A stretch of 64,000 bases of DNA, taken from Selaginella moellendorffii (taxonomy: Eukaryota > Plantae > Lycopodiophyta). A model generated the notes under the pieces. That model worked only from the letters and a program-made list of their open reading frames with translations. It had not been told where the DNA came from and searched no databases. The stretch lies in assembly GCF_000143415.4 (NCBI RefSeq), contig NW_003314286.1:1425718-1489717 (forward strand), in the 5' to 3' direction. The translations under genes were made by a program, and so were the position numbers. Of the stretch, positions 1-64,000 are shown in pieces. Every line of letters begins with the position of its first letter. Positions within the stretch are counted from its first letter, which is position 1.

Positions 1-1471
1 CTCCCGACTACCAGCGATTTGACGAGTTCGAGTTCTTAGATGGCTTGTTGTACCGTGGGGAGCAGCTTTACGTTCCTAAAGGTGATGCTCAAAGGTTGGT
101 CCTGATGGCGTGCCACAATAGCCCGACTGCTGGTCACTTCGGCATCGCAAAGACCTATGAGTTGGTTGCACGAGACTTTTGGTGGCCTCACATGGACGAC
201 TACATCAAAACTTTTGTTACCTCCTGTGACACTTGCACCCGAAATAAGGTACCTCACCACCTTCCTTCAGGTTTGCTTCGTTCCCTCCCGGTCCCTTCAG
301 GTCCTTGGGAATCCATCTCCATGGATTTCTTGAGTGATCTTCCGAGTTCTGGAGGCTTCAACAGCATTTTAGTCGTGGTGGATCGCTTCACAAAGATGGC
401 ACACTTCCTGCCGTGTACCAAGGAGTTTTCGGGCGAGGACATAGCAAAACTGGTATTTAGGGAAATTTTCCGACTTCATGGGTTTCTACAGATGTGGTTT
501 CAGATTGGGGACCTTAGTTCATCTCTCATTTTTGGCAATGGTTTTTGCAGTTGCTTGGAGTGAAGGACAACCTTTCTTTGGCGTATCATCCTCAAACTGA
601 TGGATAGTCCAAGCGAATGATTCAGACATTAGAACAATTCCTGAGGTGCTTCATCAACTATCATCAGGATGACTGGTTCGATATCCTTCCCCGTGCTCAG
701 TTCTCCTATAACAACTCTGTTCACTCCTCTCTTCGAGTTTCCCCCTTCTTTGCGAACTCTGGCCAAAATCCCCAATTCAATCTCTCACTTCCTTCTCCAT
801 CCAAATCCTTTCATTCAAATCCCCGCTCTGAGACATTTGTCTCCAACCTCCAGGAAATCCACAACTCCATCTCCTTCCACCTCCATCGTGCTCAGGAATC
901 TCACAAAACATTTGCCAATGCCCATCGTAAGGATTGTCCCCCTTACAATATTGAGAATAAAGTTTGGCTCCTCAGGCGAAATATCTCCACCACTAGGCCA
1001 TGTCCCAAACTCGATTTCAAACACCTTGGTCCTTTCCCTATCACTGCTATTATTAATCCTATTACTTATCGCCTTGCACTTCCCTCCTCCTATCAAATTC
1101 ACCCTGTTTTTCACTCCTCTCTCCTTGAGCCTTATATTCCCAGTCCTATTCCAAATTGGGTCATTCCTCCGCCTCCACTAGTGCAGCTCAAGGATGGGTC
1201 TAAGTACGAGGTTCAGGACATCCTTGATTCCAAGATCTCATGGTTTAAACTTTACTATCTGGTCGACTGGAAGGGTTATGGACATGAAGAACGCACTTGG
1301 GAACCTACGGACAACCCGATTCATTCTCCTGACCTTGTTCAGGACTTCCACTGCCGCTATCCTTCTCATCCCAGTCCTCATTCTTTGTCTCCATCTCCCA
1401 TCCCTCGCCGCCTCATCTCATCTCATCCTCCTCTTCGTTCTCATTCACGTCCTCGTTCCACTCGTTCTTGA
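1..1471 (+). mobile_element. Ty3/gypsy chromovirus, 3' part of pol (integrase + chromodomain), degenerate
   Basis: Integrase zinc finger (H..GHFG...CDTC), core 'ISMDF...VVVDRFTKMAHF', GPF motif, chromodomain 'YEVQDILDSK..YYLVDWKGYGHEERTWEP'. Frameshift and stops at ~480-610. Confidence 0.93.
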
Positions 1472-11962: not shown

Positions 11963-12035
11963 GGGGGTGTAGCTCAGATGGTAGAGCGATCGCTTTGCAT
12001 GCGATAGGTAAGGGGATCGATACCCCTCATCTCCA
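11963..12035 (+). tRNA. tRNA-Ala(UGC)
   Basis: 73-nt cloverleaf GGGGGTGTAGCTCAGATGGTAGAGC..ATCGC TT TGC AT GCGAT..GGATCGATACCCCTCATCTCCA, with G3:U70. Confidence 0.95.
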
Positions 12036-15475: not shown

Positions 15476-15548
15476 TGGAGGTGAGGGGCATCGATCCCCT
15501 TACCTATCGCATGCGAAGCGATCGCTCTACCATCTGAGCTACACCCCC
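15476..15548 (-). tRNA. tRNA-Ala(CGC)
   Basis: Reverse complement is a 73-nt cloverleaf 70/73 identical to the tRNA at 11963; anticodon CGC. Confidence 0.95.
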
Positions 15549-52640: not shown

Positions 52641-53423
52641 ACACCGCATCATAGCAGCTAAATGGTCTCACGTGGAGACCGGCCGACGAATCCGCCCACG
52701 GCTGCCACGCCACCTCTGCCACTAGCTGTGCAACGCAGCCCAGGTATATGCCCCACAATTCCTATCGCATGAGGAAGAGGTCAGCCTCCTGGAGCAATGA
52801 TGAAGAAATGGAAGAGCTTGTGGAGTTCATTGAAGACATAGATGGGGCAGAGGGTTCAAGATGCCACAGCGCTCTGTCACCTTTTGAGGCAACTCCTCAT
52901 TATAAAAATACACCAGGAAACTTTGAGAAGTAAATGTCCAGATTGCGCAGGCTTTCCACGGCCTTATCAAATGTTGTTTTCATCAGCCCTCCTGGCAAGT
53001 GGGTGAAACTTGTCAATGGTTCTTCTCAAACAAATCAATCAAACTTGAGCATCTTGCAAGTCCTTGGCCCGCTTTCAAACGGCGTAAGTAGAGATAGTTG
53101 TTGAATCACCGTAAGGTGGCAGTGCGTAAAAAGAAAAACGATTTCTTCATGGAATCTCCAGCAAGCGTGTCGCGGGCTTGAGACTTCCGCCTCCTAGAAG
53201 CTTGCAGTACAAGAGGACGACCGAGGCTGGAACACAAGCCCCTTGCCTACCAACAATGCATGTTGAGAGTGGCCCTGTGCCACGTGGCTAGTCCACGTGG
53301 AGAGACACGAGTCTTCACCGGTTCACCATGTCACACATATGTACATTTTCCATTCCATATATGCTATGACGGATCTTGAGCACCATCACACGGTTTCACC
53401 TTTCGTTAGATGGTATCGGAGCA

Positions 53424-53564
53424 ATGCCTGGGAGAGCGAGAAGAATTCGAAACCGTAGGATCAGGGCGACACTTGCTAGGGTGAATCAGAGCCTCCGTCT
53501 ACGTAGACAGAGGCGTGCCCTAATCCAAACGCTCCAGGCCTTGCAAGAGGCACTGGACGACTAA
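53424..53564 (+). CDS. Arg-rich 46-aa upstream ORF of the copia element (hypothetical)
   Basis: MPGRARRIRNRRIRATLARVNQSLRLRRQRRALIQTLQALQEALDD*, immediately after the PBS. Confidence 0.45.
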   Translation: MPGRARRIRNRRIRATLARVNQSLRLRRQRRALIQTLQALQEALDD

Positions 53565-53613
53565 GAACCTGGACCTAGACTTGAACGAGTGGTGGGATTG
53601 GGTGTCAGCACCC

Positions 53614-56600
53614 ATGGCAGCCACTGTTCCTACAAATACGCCTCCAAATCCACCACCTATTTCCCCTCCCATCACAAATCCGACTGTGCCTACAGCGGAT
53701 ATCGTTTCAGTGGACGCAAATCCACCAAAATTTGATGGGAGGAACTGGCGCTTCTGGAAGACAAAATTCGAATCCTATATGGATGAACGAGGCCTCTGGG
53801 ACATCACCACAGGAACTGAGACACTTCCAGATACAGCTACAGTGGATGAAACTGCGAAGTATCGCAAGAAGGACCGGAGAGCTTTGGGCAAATTCCATGC
53901 AGCGCTGGAGGGGCGAGAATTCCATTGCATTGGACGGTGCAAGAGTGCAAAGGAAGCGTGGGAGGCCATGAAGCAGACTTACCAGATCCCTTCAACATCC
54001 CATCGCATCTTTTTACGGAAGCAGCTTCATGCACTGGTGATGGCTGAAGGGGATGACCTCAAGGATCATCTTGCTGCAGCGAGAACAATCTTAGATGATC
54101 TTAAGGATGTGGGAGCGAAGATAGAGGATGAAGAAGAAGCAGAGCTGGTGCTCGTCACACTTCCTCCATCCTTTGATCCTCTCATACGTAGCCTCACTAC
54201 CACTGGAACTCCTCTAACCCTGAATGGCGTGATCAGTAGCCTCCAGGACGATGATCTGAGACGAAGAGCAACAACAGGATCAGAGGCCGTTGCATTCTAC
54301 TCTTCTCTCAGGAAAGAAACAGTGAACAAAGGGAAACAAGGAGCCTCTTCATCCAAGAAGCCCAAGTGTTCTCATTGCAACAAGAAAGGCCATGACGAAG
54401 CTCAATGCTGGGTGAAAAATCCATCTCTCAAGCCTGTAAGGAACAATGCAAAGAAAAAGGTGGTGCACGCCTTCATCTTGTCACGAGCTATGGCAGTGGC
54501 AGCACTGTCTACAGAGTGCATCTACCTGGATTCTGCTGCTACAGACCATATGTTCAACAGTGATAAGTACTTTGAAGCCTATGTTCCTACAGCCACAGAG
54601 GAGTATGTCATCGTTGGCAATGCCCAGCAGCTTGCTGTGAAAGGAGTTGGAACCATCAAGTTCACTTTACCACAAGGAATAGTCGTAAAGATCCACGAGG
54701 TTCTTTATATTCCTGGTTTATGTGCTAATTTGTTCTCTGTGGGACAATTTGCTGAGGATGGGTATCAGTTCGCCATTACACCTCGCCAATTCCAGCTGAT
54801 CTCGACCACAGGAGCCATCCTCACAGCGTCCCGGCCTGGACGGCGTGACCTCTACCGCCTTACCATGCTGCCAGATCTTGCTGGACGGAGTCTGGGCCTA
54901 CACGCACAAAAGACAACGACCAGTCACTCACTGGAGCTTTGGCACGCACGCCTGGGGCATCCTAGTGCTGATAGAATCAAGCAGCTCGCACGCGAGCAGA
55001 TGGTTGAAGGTCTAGACCTGGACCCAAGAGCCGTTCTTCCATTTTGCCAGGGCTGTCAGCTAGGAAAATCTACTCGCCAACCTTTCCCCAAGACTGGAGC
55101 ATCTCGAGCTACAGAGCTCATGGAACTTGTACACACTGATGTGAGTGGCCCGATGGCCACCACAGCAGTGGGAGGTATCCAATACTTTATCAGTTTCATT
55201 GATGACTACAGTCGTCGCACTATGATCTACCCTATGGCTCGCAAATCCCAATCGTTACACTACTTCCAGACTTTCAAGGATATGGGAGAAACACAAACTG
55301 GGAAAATGCTCAAGCGATTGAGAAGTGATGGTGGAGGCGAATTCACTTCCAATGCTTTCAACCAGCTGTGTGAGCAAGGAGGGATTGTGCGAGAACTTAC
55401 AACGCGAGAGACTCCACAACAGAATGGCGTAGCTGAGCGCAAGAATCGCACACTAGTGGAGAGTGCTCGGGCAATGCTACTTTCCAGTGGTTTGCCTCGC
55501 AGCTTCTGGTTTCACGCTGTTTTGACGGCGAACTATCTCCAGAACCGGCTCCCCACCTCTGCCCTTGCTGACATCACTCCTGAAGAAGCATGGAGTGGCA
55601 AGAAACCTACAGTTACGCATCTGAGAATATTCGGGTGTGAAGCGTGGGCACACATCCCTGATGGAATGCGCAAGAAATTGGATCCCAAGAGCCAGAAGGC
55701 TGTGTTTGTGGGCTACAGCCTCGATCACAAAGCCTATCGTCTCTGGAATCCAATCACGAAGCAGGAGATCCTGAGCAGAGAAGTGGTTTTCAACGAGAAT
55801 TCGTTTCTTCCTTCTAGTCAAGGTTCTACTTCCAGACCTACCTTGACCGAAGAAAATGACGTTGAAGCGGAACAAGATCAGTTGACTGTCGGCACGATCA
55901 CTGTGCCGCTTCAAACAGTCCCTACGCAACAACCCATGCCCGCTTCTACTCCAACACCACCAACCCCGCCGCCTCCTCCAGATCCTCTACGCAGATCGAT
56001 CCGCACAAGGCGGCCTACTGAGCGTCTCATCGAGACAATGGTCTCCTCTCGTGCAGCTACTCCTACTGTTCCGAGGACCTATGGAGAAGCCATGGCCTCA
56101 CAGGAAGCGTCTTACTGGCGTGTAGCAATGGAAGCCGAGATTGCTTCACAGCAAAAGAACGAGACACATGTTCTTGTTCCAACTGTGCCTTCCGATCGCC
56201 AGATTATCAAGAGCATGTGGGTGTATGCTCTGAAGCTTAATCCTGATGGCTCGGTTCGCTACAAGGCGCGATTGGTGGCGAAAGGATGCTCGCAAGTTCC
56301 TGGACTTGACTACAACGACACCTTTGCTCCAGTGGTTAAGCATTCTACTCTTCGTTCCTTGATTAATTTTGCTGCGGTGGGAGATTTTGATCTGGAACAG
56401 ATGGATGTGACCACGGCGTTTCTTTATGGCGCGCTTGAAGAAGAAATCTATATGGCACAGCCAGAAGGATTTCTAGCCGCTGGAAAAGAGGATCATCTCT
56501 GGCTTCTCAAGAAAGCTGTCTACGGTTTGAAACAAGCACCCAGATCTTGGTACAAACGCTTTGACGATTTTATACTAAGTGTGGGCTTTTCCCGTAGCGA

Positions 56601-57693
56601 GGCAGACCCGAATCTTTATATTCGGGTGGAGGGTGAATCATTTGTGATCATCGGTCTTTATGTTGATGATACTCTTGTCATCCATAATCATCGCTTAATG
56701 TTTCTCCAGGTTAAGCGAGATCTTTGCAGCCAATTTGAGATGAAAACTCTTGGCTCGGCTTCCTACTTTCTTGGCATGGAACTTGTGCGTGATCGCTCTC
56801 AACGCACTATCTATCTTCACCAAGCCAAGTATATAGAAGATATGCTGGCCAGGTTTTCTATGACGAGCTCTAATCCAGTGGCGACACCAATGGAACTAGG
56901 CTGCCAGCTTTCACAAGCCATGTCTCCTGAGACAGAGGACGACAAGAGAGCCATGGACTCCATCCCTTACAGACAAGCTGTTGGCAGTCTCATGTATCCA
57001 GCTGTTTGTACGCGCCCAGATATTTCTTTTGCCGTGAGCAAAGTTAGCCAATTCCTGGCTAATCCTGGATCTCAACATTGGGCAGCGGTGAAACGCATCT
57101 TCAGGTACCTTCGAGGTACTACTTACCTTGGATTGTGCTACCAGGGAGAAGCGCTTACCCTCACGGGGTACTGTGATGCTGATTTTGGGGGAGACTGTGA
57201 CACACGCAAGTGCACCTCTGGCTATTCGTTTTCCCTGGGCAGTGCGACAGTCTCGTGGTGCAGCAGGAAGCAAAGTACAGTGGCAACCTCTAGTACTGAA
57301 GCAGAATATTTGGCAGCCTCACAAGCTACCAAAGAAGGTGTGTGGTTACGCTCACTACTTTCTAACCTTGGTGTGAGTGTGAAGACTCCCACTCGCCTCT
57401 TCTGTGACAATCAAAGCTGCATTGCGTTAGCGGCCAATCCTCGCTTTCATTCACACACCAAACACTTTGGGATTCATCATCATTTCGTTCGTGAGAAAGT
57501 GGAAGATGGCACAATTGAGCTGATCTACTGCGACACGACCACTCAGGTTGCAGATATCTTCACAAAAGCACTACCCCGAGATCGATTTCAAGTCCATCGC
57601 GAAGGGCTGGGACTTTCTCCACTGATGAGCATCACTCGTGATGGCCACAGTGCCAGTGGGAGTGTTGAGAGTGGCCCTGTGCCACGTGGCTAG
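53614..57693 (+). CDS. Copia gag-pol polyprotein (gag-CCHC, protease, integrase, RT, RNase H)
   Basis: CSHCNKKGHDEAQC, LDSAATDHM, WHARLGH..CQGC, RSDGGGEF, NGVAER, YVDD, ADIFTKAL; uninterrupted; stop lies inside the 3' LTR. Confidence 0.96.
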   Translation: MAATVPTNTPPNPPPISPPITNPTVPTADIVSVDANPPKFDGRNWRFWKTKFESYMDERGLWDITTGTETLPDTATVDETAKYRKKDRRALGKFHAALEGREFHCIGRCKSAKEAWEAMKQTYQIPSTSHRIFLRKQLHALVMAEGDDLKDHLAAARTILDDLKDVGAKIEDEEEAELVLVTLPPSFDPLIRSLTTTGTPLTLNGVISSLQDDDLRRRATTGSEAVAFYSSLRKETVNKGKQGASSSKKPKCSHCNKKGHDEAQCWVKNPSLKPVRNNAKKKVVHAFILSRAMAVAALSTECIYLDSAATDHMFNSDKYFEAYVPTATEEYVIVGNAQQLAVKGVGTIKFTLPQGIVVKIHEVLYIPGLCANLFSVGQFAEDGYQFAITPRQFQLISTTGAILTASRPGRRDLYRLTMLPDLAGRSLGLHAQKTTTSHSLELWHARLGHPSADRIKQLAREQMVEGLDLDPRAVLPFCQGCQLGKSTRQPFPKTGASRATELMELVHTDVSGPMATTAVGGIQYFISFIDDYSRRTMIYPMARKSQSLHYFQTFKDMGETQTGKMLKRLRSDGGGEFTSNAFNQLCEQGGIVRELTTRETPQQNGVAERKNRTLVESARAMLLSSGLPRSFWFHAVLTANYLQNRLPTSALADITPEEAWSGKKPTVTHLRIFGCEAWAHIPDGMRKKLDPKSQKAVFVGYSLDHKAYRLWNPITKQEILSREVVFNENSFLPSSQGSTSRPTLTEENDVEAEQDQLTVGTITVPLQTVPTQQPMPASTPTPPTPPPPPDPLRRSIRTRRPTERLIETMVSSRAATPTVPRTYGEAMASQEASYWRVAMEAEIASQQKNETHVLVPTVPSDRQIIKSMWVYALKLNPDGSVRYKARLVAKGCSQVPGLDYNDTFAPVVKHSTLRSLINFAAVGDFDLEQMDVTTAFLYGALEEEIYMAQPEGFLAAGKEDHLWLLKKAVYGLKQAPRSWYKRFDDFILSVGFSRSEADPNLYIRVEGESFVIIGLYVDDTLVIHNHRLMFLQVKRDLCSQFEMKTLGSASYFLGMELVRDRSQRTIYLHQAKYIEDMLARFSMTSSNPVATPMELGCQLSQAMSPETEDDKRAMDSIPYRQAVGSLMYPAVCTRPDISFAVSKVSQFLANPGSQHWAAVKRIFRYLRGTTYLGLCYQGEALTLTGYCDADFGGDCDTRKCTSGYSFSLGSATVSWCSRKQSTVATSSTEAEYLAASQATKEGVWLRSLLSNLGVSVKTPTRLFCDNQSCIALAANPRFHSHTKHFGIHHHFVREKVEDGTIELIYCDTTTQVADIFTKALPRDRFQVHREGLGLSPLMSITRDGHSASGSVESGPVPRG

Positions 57694-58021
57694 TCCACGT
57701 GGAGAGACACGAGTCTTCACCGGTTCACCATGTCACACATATGTACATTTTCCATTCCATATATGCTATGACGGATCTTGAGCACCATCACACGGTTTCA
57801 CCTTTCGTTAGAATGCACGCATCCAGTTACCCGCACTTGAATGCGGGGAGTGCTCTTTGTGTGGTGAAAAGTCTTTGTGTTGCAAACAGGGCGTTGCACG
57901 GCGTGAAGAAAAGTCTTTGTCTAAACCCAGCACGCGAAAAAGAAATATTAGAAAAGCAAGGAAAGACTGCATTTGCATGCCTTGAGTTTTCTTTCTCGAG
58001 CAAAGTCGCAAGTCCCCCTCC

Positions 58022-59759
58022 ATGAAGAACTCTTTGGTATTCTTGTTGATCGTGATGGCACAATCTTTGCTGCAGGTGGAATCCAACTGTCAGGTAGTCC
58101 AACAAAGAGCAAAACAAAGGAAAGTAAGCTTGCCTTGACATTTTTTTCCAGACGGGCGAATGGATCAGCCACGGAGGAGATCTCAAGAATCGTCGCTTTG
58201 CAGAAGATGAGCACTTGATCAGCGTCTGGAGCGCGCCTCACTTAAGCGAAAAGTGGAGCTTTGACGCCGGCGCGGACATTTCGGCCACGCCGGCGATTTA
58301 CGACTGTGTTGTCTACTTCCCATCGTGGAACGGGCTTGTCTTCGCAGTTACCATCCACGGAGAACTTCTCTGGCGCGTCAACTTGACAAAAATCACGGGA
58401 GTTGCCACTTTGTCACGGACGACACCGGCTGTGACCGAAGAGTTCTTGCTGTATGGTTTGCTCGGTCCCGCTAGAGTTGTTGCTTTACACCGTAAGAGTG
58501 GAAGAATGGTGTGGATGTCAGAAGATCTGGATGAAACGCCCCTGGCAAGGATCACCATGTCAGGAACAGCATACGACGGGTAAGAAAACTTCCTTTCTTT
58601 TCTTTTTTTCTTTTCTTTTTTTCTGCTCTGGAGCACCTATCATTTTGGCAGAGCTTTCTACGTTGGTATATCTTCGCTCCAAGAGCTTGTGGAGGCAGCC
58701 TGTTGCACATTCCAAGGAAGCTTTCAGAAACTCGACCTCAAAACTGGAAAACGAATATGGAGAACTTCCATGGTTCCTGAAAACTCCAGTTTCTACGGTG
58801 TTACAGTATGGGGAAGCAGTCCTTCCATCGATCCCAAGCGAGGACTCGCCTTCATTGGCACTGGAAACCTCTACCAGATCCCGAGCGACGTCCAGGACTG
58901 CCTCAACAGAAACGCCAACTCGAGCGACTGCTATCCTCGCGGCGTCTGTGATGACGCCGTTGTAGCCGTGAACATGGCCGACGGTGAGATACGCTGGTGT
59001 AACAGGCTCGGAGGAAACGACGTATGGAGGCTTGCTTGTGACACAAATCCACCACCAGCAAACTGTCCACCTGAGCCTGGGCCGGACTACGACTTTGGAG
59101 AGTCGCCGATGCTCCTCACGATCCCAAGCCGTTTCTCCAAGAACAAGTTCCAAGATATTCTCGTCACCGGTCAGAAGAGCGGCATTGTTTGGGCTCACGA
59201 TCGAGACGACGGCAGCCTTGTCTGGGAAACGGTAACTCGAGCTCCTGTTGATATCTAGCTTGTCCTTCCTGGTCACCTTTTGTTTTCCTCCTGTTTTGTG
59301 AAGACTGCCGGACCTGGTGGCTCTGTAGGTGGAGCGATCTGGGGAGCCGCCACTGACAACCATCGAGTATACACCAACATCGCAAACTCTGACCGTGCTA
59401 CGTTCCACCTCGTTCCTTCCGGAGAAAGCACCACCGCTGGTGGCTGGGTGGCCATGGACGCCGCTACTGGAAGAATAGAATGGTCAACTGCGAATCCACA
59501 CGGTGCGCGAGCTTACGGGCCTGTGACTGTCGCCAACGGTGTGGTCTTCTGCGGATCATTCGACAAGGATGGTCATGTTCTCGCACTGGACGCAGAGAGT
59601 GGACGTATACTGTGGGAACGTACCACTGGTTCGACGGTCTACGGAGGACCCTCAGTCGGGCACGGGTGTTGGTTTATTGGAACGGGATACTCACGGGCTC
59701 CACTGGCTCCTGCGCTTGGAGGAACTCCCGGCTCCGAATTATATGCCTTCTGTGTATGA
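58022..59759 (+). CDS. Secreted PQQ-type beta-propeller protein (polyvinyl-alcohol-dehydrogenase-like)
   Basis: Signal peptide MKNSLVFLLIVMAQ.., 'W.SHGGDLKNRR', ISATP, 'VWGSSPSID..IGTGN', 'GPDYDFGESP', GQKSG, repeated A.D..G...W blades; 3 introns. Confidence 0.88.
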
Positions 59760-59904
59760 CATGATCAAGGCAGCACTAGATAGACGCACGTAATAACGTT
59801 CTCACAGTGTTCATAGCCGAAGTAGATGCTGTACCTGGAAGGTAGACCTCTTACATCTTGTGCAGCTTAAATCTTATACGACTAGAAAAGTTGACTGGGA
59901 CTTC

Positions 59905-61505: not shown

Positions 61506-61706
61506 CGTTTGTGTGTACTATGTGTTGGCCAGGCTAGCAATACAATGGGCTCAGAAGTCTTTTCTAGGTGTATAACAGGTTTAAGCTGTACAAGATGGAA
61601 GAGCGTGAGCTCCAACTTACAGGTACACCATCTAGAATATTGACTTCGGTTAGGAACACTGGGAGAAACTTGTTGCGTGCGTCTTTCTAATGCTGCCTTG
61701 ATAATG

Positions 61707-63420
61707 TCATACACAGAAGGCATATAATTCGGATCCGGGAGTTCCTCCAAGCGCAGCACCCAGTGGATCCCGTGAGTATCCCGTTCCAACAAACCAACAC
61801 TCGTGCCCGACTGAGAGCCTTCCATAGACCGTCGAACCAGTGGTACGTTCCCACAGTATACGTCCACTCTCTGCGTCTAGTGCGAGAACATGACCATCCT
61901 TGTCGAATGATCCGCAGAAGACCACACCGTTGGCGACAGTCACAGGCTCGTATGCTCGCGCACTGTGTGGATTCGCAGTGGACCATTCTATTCTTCCAGT
62001 AGCGGCATCCATGGCCACCCAGCCACCAGCAGTGGTGCTTCCTCCGGAAGGAACGAGCTGGAACGTAGCACGGTCAGAGTTTGCGATGTTGGTGTACACT
62101 CGATGGTTGTCAGTGGCGGCTCCCCAGATCGCTCCACCTACAAAGCCACCAGGTCCGGCAGTCTTCACAAAACAGGAGGAAAACCAAAGGTGACCAGGAA
62201 GGACAAGCTAGATATCAACAGGAGCTCGAGTTACCTTTTCCCAGGCAAGGCTGCCGTCGTCTCGATCGTGAGCCCAAACAATGCCGCTCTTCTGACCGGT
62301 GACGAGAATATCTTGGAACTTGTTCTTGGAGAAACGGCTTGGGATCGTGAGGAGCATCGGTGACTCTCCCAGGTCGTAGTCCGGCCCAGGCTCAGGTGGA
62401 CAGTTTGCTGGTGGTGGATTTGTGTCACAAGCAAGCCTCCATACGTCGTTTCCTCCGAGCCTGTTACACCAGCGTATCTCACCGTCGGGCATGTTCACGG
62501 CTACAACGGCGTCGTCACAGACGCCGCGAGGATAGCAGTCGCTCGAGTTGGCGTTTCTGTTGAGGCAGTCCTGGACGTCGCTCGGGATCTGGTAGAGGTT
62601 TCCAGTGCCAATGAAGGCGAGTCCTCGCTTGGGATCGATGGAAGGACTGCTTCCCCAAACTGTAACGCCGTAGAACCGGAATTTTCAGGAGCCATGTAAG
62701 TTTAAGTTCTCCATATTCGTTTTCCAGTTTTCGAGTTTCTGAAAGCTTCCTTGGAATGTGCAACAGGCTGCCTTTACAAGCTCTTGGAGCGAAGACATAC
62801 CAACGTAGAAAGCTCTGCCAGTATGATAGGTTCTCAAGAGCAGAAAAAAAGAAAAGAAAAGAAGTTTGCTTACCCGTCGTATGTTGTTCCTGACATGGTG
62901 ATCCTTGCCAGGGGCGTTTCATCCAGATCTTCTGACATCCACACCATTCTTCCATTCTTACGGTGTAAAGCAACACCTCTAGCGGGACCGAGCAAACCAT
63001 ACAGCAAGAGCTCTTCGGTCACAGCCGGTATCGTCCGCGACAAAGTGGCAACTCCCGTGATTTCTGTCAAGTTCGTGCTCCAGAGAAGTTCTCCGTGGAT
63101 GGTAACTGCGAAGACAAGCCCGTTCCACGATGGGAAGTAGACAACACAGTCGTAAATCGCCGGTGTGGCCGAAATGTCCGCGCCGGCGTCAAAGCTCCAC
63201 TTTTCTCTTAAGTGAGGCGCCCTCCAGACGCTGATCAAGTGCTCATCTTCTGCAAAGCGACGATTCTTGAGATCTCCTCCGTGGCTGATCCATTCGCCCG
63301 TCTGGAAAAAAAATGTCAAGGCAAGCTTATTTTCCTTTGTTTGGACTACCTGACAGTTGGATTCCACCTGCAGCAAAGATTGTGCCAGCACGATCAACAT
63401 GAATACGAAAGAGTTCTTCT
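61707..63420 (-). pseudogene. Inverted, disabled copy of the PQQ-propeller gene
   Basis: Original ATG changed to AAG; -5/+6/-1 indels with an in-frame TGA at 62685-62687. Confidence 0.8.
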
Positions 63421-63962
63421 TGGAGGGGGATTTGCGACTTTGCTCGAGAAAGAAAACTCAAGGCATGCAAATGCAGTCTTTCTTTGCTTTTCTAAGATTT
63501 CATTTTCGCGTGCTGGGTTTAGACAAAGACTTTTCTTCATGCCGTGCAACACCCTGTTTGCAACACAAAGACTTTTCACCACACAAAGAGCACTCCCCGC
63601 ATTCAAGTGCGGGTAACTGGATGCGTGCATTGTTGGTAGGCAAGGGGCTTGTCCTCTTCCTTGCTATCATAGATTGGCATCACTCCCATGTCAACGAGAC
63701 CACCATCTTGAGCATGGTTCCAGCCTCGGTCGTCCTCTTGTACTGCAAGCTTCTAGGAGGCGGAAGTCTCAAGCCCGCGACACGCTTGCTGGAGATTCCA
63801 TGACGAAATCGTTTTTCTTTTTGTGCACTGCCACCTTATGGTGATTCAACAACTATCTCTACTTACGCCGTTTGAAAGCGGGCCAAGGATTTGCAAGATG
63901 CTAAAGTTTGATTGATTTGTTTGAGAAGAACCATTGACCAGTTTTCATCCACTTGCCAGGAG

Positions 63963-64000
63963 GTTCGAATACCGTGGTACGCATGGGACTTCAACAAGCA
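63963..64000 (+). pseudogene. Start of a plus-strand copy of an SCPL-2 exon
   Basis: 36/38 identical to the reverse complement of ~41952-41990 (V.IPWYAWDFN). Confidence 0.75.

What the first reader, a model, noticed from the sequence alone, without database searches (positions are those of the whole stretch)
53411..53616. Copia element carries a Rev/Rex-like Arg-rich + Leu-rich mini-ORF between PBS and gag
Seen: an ATG 1 nt after the PBS opens a 46-codon ORF with 12 Arg in its first 31 residues (RARRIRNRRIR...RLRRQRR). It continues into an amphipathic Leu-periodic helix (LIQTLQALQEAL) and stops ~50 nt before the gag ATG. Known: arginine-rich RNA-binding/NLS plus Leu-rich NES is the architecture of retroviral export adaptors (HIV Rev, HTLV Rex), and canonical copia elements encode only gag-pol. 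Inference: this may be an undescribed accessory protein for RNA export or packaging, or a regulatory uORF controlling gag translation by reinitiation.
Basis: partly seen in the sequence, partly recalled or inferred. Interest (0 to 1): 0.8.

Follow-up and report, generated by a model that had tools for sequence, protein, structure and literature searches.

The report
Arginine-rich upstream ORF in copia leader
A young, intact copia retrotransposon of the clubmoss Selaginella moellendorffii has a real 46-codon, arginine-rich reading frame between its primer site and gag. Nothing ties it to Rev/Rex-type export proteins, so it is best read as an upstream ORF that throttles gag-pol translation.

Summary
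ATG 53424 opens a 46-codon ORF with 13 Arg, all in the first 31 residues. It stops 49 nt before the gag ATG at 53614.

The host element (53261-57812) is an intact Ty1/copia. It has identical 150-bp LTRs and a 5-bp target duplication, and a paralogous empty site in the same window confirms its bounds.

- **ORF length:** not unusual (P=0.08 in shuffles).
- **Arg density:** unusual (P=0.0002).
- **Rev/Rex likeness:** every test that could be run failed. There was no Pfam, PDB, Foldseek or word-search hit. The Leu-rich stretch fits no NES class pattern. Amphipathicity is not above residue shuffles. Synonymous codon use looks random.
- **Source of the Arg codons:** a purine tract next to the PBS and a palindromic hairpin.
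a second overlapping uORF (53410-53484).
- **Relatives:** no family member was retrievable (closest polyproteins at most 45% identical), so conservation is untested. Six distant relatives have leaders with no uORF or only 3-15-codon ones, none Arg-rich.

Best reading: a cis-acting uORF pair in a structured leader. A trans-acting basic peptide remains a minority possibility.

The parts
53261..57812 (+). Complete Ty1/copia LTR retrotransposon, 4552 bp, single copy in the window
   Evidence: LTR pair. Only self-hits in blastn and tblastn against the window. A paralogous empty site in the other arm of an inverted duplication reads straight through with one ATGCA.
53256..53260 (.). Target-site duplication ATGCA, left copy (right copy at 57813-57817)
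53261..53410 (+). 5' LTR, 150 bp, termini TG...GA. Carries two CCACGTGG motifs (53280-53287, 53293-53300) and a TATA-like CATATATG near 53356.
   Evidence: 100% identical to 57663-57812. Motifs read. Promoter role is inferred.
57663..57812 (+). 3' LTR. The gag-pol stop codon (57691-57693) lies inside it.
53411..53422 (+). Primer binding site TGGTATCGGAGC
   Evidence: Abuts the LTR. Matches 11 of 12 bases of the PBS TGGTATCAGAGC of relatives L002 and L004. The 3'-tRNA-Met type is the usual copia PBS. Complementarity to the host tRNA was not tested.
53410..53484 (+). uORF1, 24 codons. Its ATG is formed by the LTR end plus the PBS. Context T at -3, G at +4. Its stop lies 6 nt before the hairpin.
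53424..53564 (+). The finding: 46-codon Arg-rich mini-ORF (uORF2). Context A at -3, C at +4.
   Evidence: AlphaFold predicts one helix over residues 3-45.
53430..53445 (+). Purine-rich tract (15 of 16 bases) that lies at the start of the first Arg cluster
   Evidence: Read. The other two frames of it read as Glu/Ser/Lys-rich.
53491..53514 (+). 24-nt near-perfect palindrome/hairpin (core GTCTACGTAGAC, 53497-53508) lying in the second Arg cluster
   Evidence: arms 92% complementary. (-13.5 kcal/mol, z -4.0, 0 of 200 shuffles as good). (12-nt palindrome, P=0.04).
53534..53556 (+). Second small hairpin, under the Leu-rich codons
   Evidence: -12.5 kcal/mol, z -2.25. Palindromes AGGCCT and CTTGCAAG.
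53588..53625 (+). Hairpin that embeds the gag AUG
   Evidence: 17-nt arms, 71% complementary. (-19.1 kcal/mol, z -1.8).
53614..57693 (+). gag-pol, one uninterrupted ORF of 1359 codons (0 stops, 0 frameshifts): gag, CCHC knuckle, protease barrel, integrase, RVT_2

Best explanation
The 46-codon frame is a true upstream ORF by position. It sits in the obligatory 5' leader of the element's genomic RNA, behind the PBS and ahead of gag.

Scanning ribosomes meet two overlapping upstream AUGs:
- AUG 53410: weak context, 24 codons, ends 130 nt before gag and 6 nt before a stable hairpin.
- AUG 53424: A at -3, 46 codons, ends 49 nt before gag.

Initiation at the second most likely subtracts ribosomes from gag-pol. 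At 46 codons it exceeds the roughly 35-residue size reported to trigger NMD in plants. Initiation at the first bypasses the second and leaves a long AUG-free run for reinitiation at gag. The pair would thus set how much Gag-Pol is made from an RNA that must also be packaged.

The Arg-rich peptide is most likely a by-product of RNA-level features of the leader (purine tract, palindromic hairpin), with at most a cis effect as a basic nascent chain. It is not a Rev/Rex-like adaptor.

Shown: anatomy, contexts, hairpins, absence of homologues. Inferred: translation of the uORFs, their effect on gag-pol, and NMD.
For: - **Position and frames:**
- **AUG contexts:**
- **No further AUG for 187 nt up to gag:**; gag-pol density would predict about 3.3.
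- **Leader more structured than shuffles:** z -2.6. Hairpin at 53491-53514 has z -4.0.
- **Arg clusters map onto the purine tract and the palindrome,** and are frame-specific: 15 Arg in this frame against 4 and 7 in the others.
- **Synonymous codon use** fits random choice (P=0.41) and is worse than the element's own gag-pol usage (P=0.006).
- **No homologue, family or fold match** for the peptide.
- **The element inserted recently with this leader:** identical LTRs, intact ORF, empty site. The uORFs are therefore compatible with a successful copy.
- **Precedents:** uORFs above 35 residues can trigger NMD in plants. Leader uORFs balancing translation and packaging are proposed for Rous sarcoma virus. 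uORF-plus-stem leaders are described in plant pararetroviruses.
Against: - No second copy or close relative could be examined, so nothing shows that selection keeps either uORF.
- The transcription start in the 150-bp LTR is not mapped, and no expression or ribosome data were available.
- Arg density (P=0.0002) is a stronger anomaly than any single RNA-level statistic (palindrome P=0.04; fold z -2.6). This leaves room for a peptide-level role.
- Six distant relatives manage without a long uORF.
Confidence: 0.5

Rival explanations
1. Fortuitous ORF. The leader is selected only as RNA (PBS context, hairpins, possible dimerisation or packaging palindromes). An open frame with an ATG happens to run through it. 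Any translation is neutral noise with no regulatory value.
For: - An ORF this long arises in 8% of shuffles.
- Codon use looks random.
- Whole-helix amphipathicity is not above shuffles.
- Arg codons coincide with a purine tract and a palindrome.
- Relatives' leaders lack anything similar.
Against: - An AUG with A at -3 in front of gag cannot be invisible to scanning ribosomes.
- Arg density is far beyond composition (P=0.0002) and unique among 328 ORFs in the window.
- Both Arg clusters fall in one open frame that starts with an ATG.
Confidence: 0.28
2. A trans-acting small basic protein. The peptide would be a 46-residue arginine-rich helix that binds the element's own structured leader RNA (or host RNA) and helps export, translation, packaging or evasion of silencing.
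For: - Arg density well beyond chance.
- Confident single-helix prediction, pLDDT 94.
- The C-terminal 15-mer is amphipathic (P=0.024).
- AUG in a good context.
- Structured RNA lies next door.
Against: - No hit to any Rev, Rex or other family by profile, sequence or fold.
- The named Leu-rich stretch fits no NES class. Only a class-1d pattern occurs, at residues 17-26, inside the basic part.
- Codon use is random.
- Gag already has its own CCHC nucleic-acid-binding knuckle.
- Copia elements are reported with extra ORFs only in the SIRE clade, and there 3' of pol.
- A single-helix AlphaFold model is expected for any Arg/Leu/Ala/Gln-rich string.
Confidence: 0.12
3. A shunt-like leader of the plant-pararetrovirus kind. 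The first short uORF would end just before a stem and let ribosomes jump to gag. The 46-codon frame would be merely bypassed sequence.
For: uORF1 stops 6 nt before the 53491-53514 hairpin. The configuration is defined.
Against: - The stem is 11 bp, not the large stem-loop of the defined configuration.
- The leader is only 203 nt.
- No UA-rich landing site was seen.
- uORF1's AUG context is weak.
Confidence: 0.1

Closest known systems
Leader uORFs of retroviruses (three uORFs of Rous sarcoma virus) and of plant pararetroviruses
   Same: These are short ORFs in the genomic-RNA leader between the primer site region and gag. They are intertwined with stem-loops and are proposed to balance translation against packaging or to drive shunting.
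   Different: Those uORFs are much shorter and are conserved across strains. This one has 46 codons, is strongly Arg-rich, is known from one copy only, and sits in a Ty1/copia element.
Retroviral export adaptors Rev (HIV-1) and Rex (HTLV-1)
   Same: An arginine-rich stretch followed by a leucine-containing stretch, and a predicted helical basic segment.
   Different: There is no sequence, profile or fold match. The peptide is less than half their size (my own knowledge). It is encoded in the unspliced leader rather than in a spliced 3' message. The Leu stretch fails the NES class patterns. No response element has been identified.
Extra ORFs (aORF/eORF) of plant LTR retrotransposons
   Same: Reading frames additional to gag-pol inside an LTR element. 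A location upstream of gag is known for some families.
   Different: In the two reviews read here, copia eORFs are characteristic only of SIRE and lie 3' of pol. Such ORFs count as real when they are present in all or most copies, which is untestable here.
Plant regulatory uORFs, including NMD-triggering long uORFs and conserved-peptide uORFs
   Same: An upstream AUG in a usable context, a stop shortly before the main AUG, and a length above the roughly 35-residue NMD threshold.
   Different: Conserved-peptide uORFs are defined by peptide conservation between homologues. None could be shown here.

Membership tests
Ty1/copia LTR retrotransposon (the host element) | Two LTRs flanked by a target-site duplication | tested here: met
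   150-bp LTRs 100% identical. ATGCA on both sides, and a single ATGCA at the paralogous empty site.
Ty1/copia LTR retrotransposon (the host element) | Domain order gag - protease - integrase - reverse transcriptase | tested here: met
   Pfam hits: Retrotran_gag_2 at residues 54-220, Pol_BBD 304-384, gag_pre-integrs and rve 435-598, RVT_2 850-1094. CCHC at residue 252. RNase H was not separately hit.
Ty1/copia LTR retrotransposon (the host element) | PBS complementary to the 3' end of tRNA-Met next to the 5' LTR | tested here: inconclusive
   The 12-mer matches relatives' PBS at 11 of 12 bases, and the type is usual for copia. No tRNA-Met gene of the host was available to test pairing; only two tRNA-Ala genes lie in the window.
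Rev/Rex-type retroviral RNA export adaptor | Detectable sequence, profile or fold relationship | tested here: not met
   Pfam: nothing up to E=10 except a BAG-domain match at E=0.15. PDB phmmer: only Bicaudal-D at E=1.7. Foldseek against BFVD and PDB: 0 matches. Word search: no candidate.
Rev/Rex-type retroviral RNA export adaptor | Arginine-rich RNA-binding / nuclear-import motif | tested here: met
   13 Arg in residues 4-31, P=0.0002 against shuffles. This is composition only; binding was not tested.
Rev/Rex-type retroviral RNA export adaptor | Leucine-rich nuclear export signal fitting a CRM1 class pattern | tested here: not met
   Residues 33-44 fit none of ten class patterns. One class-1d pattern occurs at residues 17-26, inside the basic region. 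The patterns were taken from my own knowledge of the published classes.
Rev/Rex-type retroviral RNA export adaptor | Cognate structured response element in unspliced RNA, and expression from a spliced message | not testable with these tools
   No transcript data. The ORF lies in the unspliced leader, unlike the known adaptors.
Regulatory upstream ORF | AUG upstream of the main AUG on the same transcript, with its stop before or overlapping the main ORF | tested here: met
   ATG 53424 and ATG 53410 lie 3' of the PBS, which must be in the genomic RNA. Their stops are at 53564 and 53484, and gag ATG is at 53614. The transcription start itself is unmapped.
Regulatory upstream ORF | Ribosome occupancy, and an effect on the main ORF | not testable with these tools
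   No expression data were reachable.
Conserved-peptide uORF / bona fide extra ORF of an LTR element | Peptide or ORF kept in most copies and in relatives | not testable with these tools
   No family member was found. The nearest polyproteins are at most 45% identical. Their leaders have no uORF or only 3-15-codon ones, and none is Arg-rich.
Pararetrovirus-type shunt leader | 5'-proximal short uORF ending in front of the stable base of a large stem-loop, with a UA-rich landing site | tested here: inconclusive
   uORF1 ends 6 nt before an 11-bp hairpin. There is no large stem-loop and no UA-rich landing site.

The most novel reading that the evidence does not exclude
The element encodes a 46-residue arginine-rich helical peptide that acts in trans on its own structured leader RNA, for example in nuclear export, the choice between translation and packaging, or shielding from RNA decay or silencing. 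That would be the first 5' accessory gene described in a Ty1/copia element, and a minimal analogue of retroviral RNA adaptors that arose independently in a lycophyte.
Probability: 0.1. Interest if true: 0.8.

Novelty: new member of a known kind. Interest (0 to 1): 0.3.

Why it matters
If the uORF pair is kept across the family, it would be a compact example of how a 4.5-kb plant retrotransposon with a single gag-pol frame tunes translation against packaging. That question is open for copia elements.

If instead the peptide is selected, copia elements would join retroviruses in having an RNA-binding accessory product.

As it stands, the value is modest. This is a well-delimited, very young, intact Selaginella copia element with an oddly composed leader ORF. 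The decisive evidence is a plain comparison of family copies, and only the tool set prevented it.

Tried and rejected
**Searches for family copies (all blank)**
- Exact-sequence look-ups of the polyprotein and the mini-ORF.
- Word-based search with the polyprotein: best hits 34-44% identity.
- Exhaustive HMMER search with 1200 residues: best 45%.
- Search with 260 residues of gag: nothing.
- Back-translated scans of metagenome and viral contigs: nothing.
- A PBS-gap-palindrome DNA pattern against metagenomes: nothing.
- All twelve contig look-ups are spent.

**Ideas rejected**
- The peptide replaces a missing nucleocapsid. Rejected because Gag has a CCHC knuckle.
- The mini-ORF is a detached N-terminus of Gag, as in relative L004 where the gag frame starts in the LTR and reads through the PBS. 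Rejected because L004's extra N-terminal part is 15 residues and not basic. Here a stop closes the gag frame between the two ORFs.
- The leader is a duplicate of an internal segment. Rejected because there is no DNA similarity beyond 11 nt. The tblastn match to an off-frame stretch of pol (56448-56561, E=0.009) is compositional.
- A known RNA family lies in the leader. None was found in Rfam.

**Other points**
- One wasteful call (69) listed every ATG in the window. One search did the job properly.
- Not tested: complementarity of the leader to parts of the primer tRNA beyond the PBS, because no host tRNA-Met sequence was available from a tool.

Full report
**1. The observation**

Reading the window confirms the layout. 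A 12-nt PBS-like TGGTATCGGAGC lies at 53411-53422, followed by one A and then ATG at 53424. The frame has 46 codons and ends at TAA 53562-53564. The gag ATG at 53614 follows 49 nt later.

- The peptide has 13 arginines, not 12, and all lie in residues 4-31.
It is made from the last LTR base plus the first two PBS bases. It opens a 24-codon frame to 53484 and overlaps the start of the 46-codon frame.
- Between 53427 and 53613 there is no further ATG.

**2. Is it more than chance?**

- *Length:* no. An ATG-ORF of at least 46 codons appears in 8.3% of dinucleotide-preserving shuffles of the 203-nt leader.
- *Composition:* yes. 13 Arg in 31 codons is reached in 0.02% of shuffles. Among 328 ATG-ORFs of at least 40 codons on both strands of the 64-kb window, this is the only one with at least 25% Arg.
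- *The 'amphipathic Leu-periodic' tail:* weak. The last 15 residues have a hydrophobic moment above residue shuffles (P=0.024, segment chosen post hoc). The whole helix does not (P 0.26-0.72).

**3. The element**

- 53261-57812 is a 4552-bp Ty1/copia element.
- Its 150-bp LTRs are 100% identical, and ATGCA is duplicated at both ends.
- The element sits in the left arm of a roughly 2-kb-arm inverted duplication. The right arm, read in reverse complement, runs straight through the insertion point with a single ATGCA. This is a paralogous empty site. It fixes the element's bounds to the base and shows that the insertion is younger than the duplication, whose arms are 94-96% alike.
- gag-pol is one uninterrupted frame of 1359 codons (53614-57693), with no stops and no frameshifts. 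It has copia gag, a CCHC knuckle, protease barrel, integrase and RVT_2 domains. Its stop codon lies inside the 3' LTR.
- It is the only copy in the window.
- A neighbouring gene places the window on scaffold GL377590.1 of assembly GCA_000143415.2. That assembly is Selaginella moellendorffii.

**4. Relatives**

No family member could be retrieved.

- Exact look-ups were blank.
- The word-based search gave at most 34-44% identity.
- An exhaustive HMMER scan of 1.8 billion representatives gave at most 45%.
- A gag-only query found nothing.
- Metagenome and viral scans by protein and by DNA pattern found nothing.
- The mini-ORF itself shares no words with any protein of 25-80 residues.

As a weaker substitute I read the leaders of six distant relatives as they stand:

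| Relative | Leader / upstream ORFs |
|---|---|
| L002 | 148-nt leader without any ATG |
| L011 | 138 nt upstream without any ATG |
| L004 | gag frame starts in the LTR and reads through the PBS |
| L009/L010 | different, half-tRNA-like PBS; 3-codon upstream frame |
| L006-L008 | different, half-tRNA-like PBS; 6- and 11-codon upstream frames |
| L003 | different, half-tRNA-like PBS; 5- and 15-codon frames upstream |

In L003 the called gag start is doubtful. An ORF that looks like a gag N-terminus lies in another frame, so gag appears to be broken once by a frameshift in that copy. This was not pursued.

None of the six has a long or Arg-rich upstream frame. At this distance that says only that the feature is not a lineage-wide trait.

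**5. Testing the Rev/Rex likeness**

I used the finding's own protein, not remembered sequences.

- Pfam gives nothing up to E=10 except a BAG-domain match at E=0.15.
- phmmer against all PDB chains gives only a coiled-coil protein at E=1.7.
- AlphaFold predicts a single helix over residues 3-45 with pLDDT 94. That is expected for an Arg/Leu/Ala/Gln-rich string.
- Foldseek finds no match in BFVD or PDB.
- The Leu-rich stretch (residues 33-44) fits none of ten CRM1 NES class patterns. The only pattern match, class 1d, lies at residues 17-26 inside the basic part.

**6. Coding signals**

Synonymous codon choice in the 46 codons is indistinguishable from random choice (P=0.41). It is poorer than expected under the element's own gag-pol usage (P=0.006) or under two host genes in the window (P<0.0002). 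For example, none of the 13 Arg codons is CGC, which is the commonest Arg codon in gag-pol. With 46 codons this is only a mild argument against a long-selected coding frame.

**7. RNA-level features**

- The leader folds better than its shuffles (z -2.6).
- A 24-nt near-perfect palindrome at 53491-53514 forms a hairpin of -13.5 kcal/mol (z -4.0; 0 of 200 shuffles as good). Its 12-nt perfect core has P=0.04.
- A second hairpin lies at 53534-53556, and a third embeds the gag AUG.
- The first Arg cluster begins in a purine tract (53430-53445) just after the PBS. The second (53491-53517) is read from the palindrome.
- In the other two frames the same bases read as Glu/Ser/Lys-rich or stop-containing strings, with 4 and 7 Arg against 15.

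By inference, two RNA-level features that both happen to lie in the Arg phase of one open frame could produce the composition without selection on a peptide. That coincidence is of the order of a few per cent. It is not negligible for something picked out of 64 kb.

**8. Mechanism**

The PBS must be in the genomic RNA, so both upstream AUGs are in the leader of any full-length transcript.

- The first (53410) has a weak context: T at -3, G at +4.
- The second (53424) has A at -3.
- gag has C at -3 and G at +4.

Ribosomes that start at 53424 terminate 49 nt before gag after 46 codons. Reinitiation after so long a uORF is expected to be poor. Upstream ORFs of more than 35 residues can trigger NMD in plants. 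Ribosomes that start at 53410 skip the second AUG and stop 6 nt before the hairpin. They then have 130 AUG-free nucleotides before gag.

I therefore read the two frames as a cis-acting pair that limits and possibly modulates Gag-Pol synthesis from an RNA that also has to be packaged. Leader uORFs with that proposed role are known in Rous sarcoma virus. uORF-plus-stem leaders are known in plant pararetroviruses, although the stem here is far smaller than in the defined shunt configuration. Translation, its effect and NMD are all inferred. None is shown.

**9. Comparison with what is known, and novelty**

- In the two reviews read here, extra ORFs in copia elements are characteristic only of the SIRE clade and lie 3' of pol. 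Extra ORFs are accepted when they occur in all or most copies.
- A full-text search for arginine-rich upstream ORFs in retrotransposons returned nothing relevant.
- The thing is therefore a new member of a known kind, a retroelement leader uORF, with an unusual composition.
- The reading as a trans-acting basic protein is not excluded. I give it about 0.1.

**10. Rules, limits and a slip**

- The window element is intact, so there were no breaks to count.
- No contig looked human.
- The functional test on a working copy is left out as not mine to propose.

Noticed in passing
window 52988-53260 plus 57813-59838, versus 61628-63963: A large inverted duplication with arms of about 2 kb, 94-96% complementary, and a spacer of about 1.8 kb. 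The copia element interrupts the left arm, and the right arm serves as an empty site. What the duplicated unit is was not determined; ORFs in it have no Pfam hit.
   Followed up: partly
window 53280-53287 and 53293-53300 (repeated in the 3' LTR at 57682-57689 and 57695-57702): Two CCACGTGG (G-box-like) motifs 13 nt apart in the presumed U3 of the 150-bp LTR, about 60 nt upstream of a TATA-like CATATATG. This hints at a light-, ABA- or stress-responsive promoter.
   Followed up: no
window 53261-53410 and 57663-57812: The LTRs are very short (150 bp) and end TG...GA instead of the usual TG...CA. The PBS abuts the LTR with no spacer, and the pol stop codon lies 31 nt inside the 3' LTR. The element is unusually compact at 4.55 kb.
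   Followed up: partly
window 53418: The PBS differs from that of relatives L002 and L004 at one position, G for A at PBS position 8. Whether this matches the host's initiator tRNA or gives a wobble pair was not tested.
   Followed up: no
window 53614-53727: The first 38 residues of Gag are about one third proline and have no counterpart in relative L004, whose Gag aligns from residue 16 to residue 39 here.
   Followed up: no
L004:3465-4778: In this metagenome relative (45% identical in pol, 23% in gag), the gag frame begins inside the LTR and reads through the PBS in the same phase as the mini-ORF frame does here. It therefore has no non-coding leader at all.
   Followed up: partly
L003:243-260, L009:2269-2285, L010:259-275, L006-L008 upstream of gag: These relatives carry a different PBS-like motif beginning GGTTATG, the half-tRNA-Met type described for some copia lineages. 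That motif contains an ATG of its own and so creates a built-in 3- to 15-codon upstream frame.
   Followed up: partly
window 617-1471 (+): A 284-codon ORF with Tf2-type SH3 and chromodomain hits. It is the integrase C-terminus of a Ty3/gypsy chromovirus, apparently a fragment.
   Followed up: no
window 11963-12035 (+) and 15476-15548 (-): Two tRNA-Ala genes (anticodons TGC and CGC), 3.4 kb apart on opposite strands.
   Followed up: no
window 56448-56561 (+), off the pol frame: A weak tblastn match of the mini-ORF to an alternative frame inside pol (39% over 38 residues, E=0.009 for a window-sized database). There is no DNA similarity, so I judged it compositional.
   Followed up: yes
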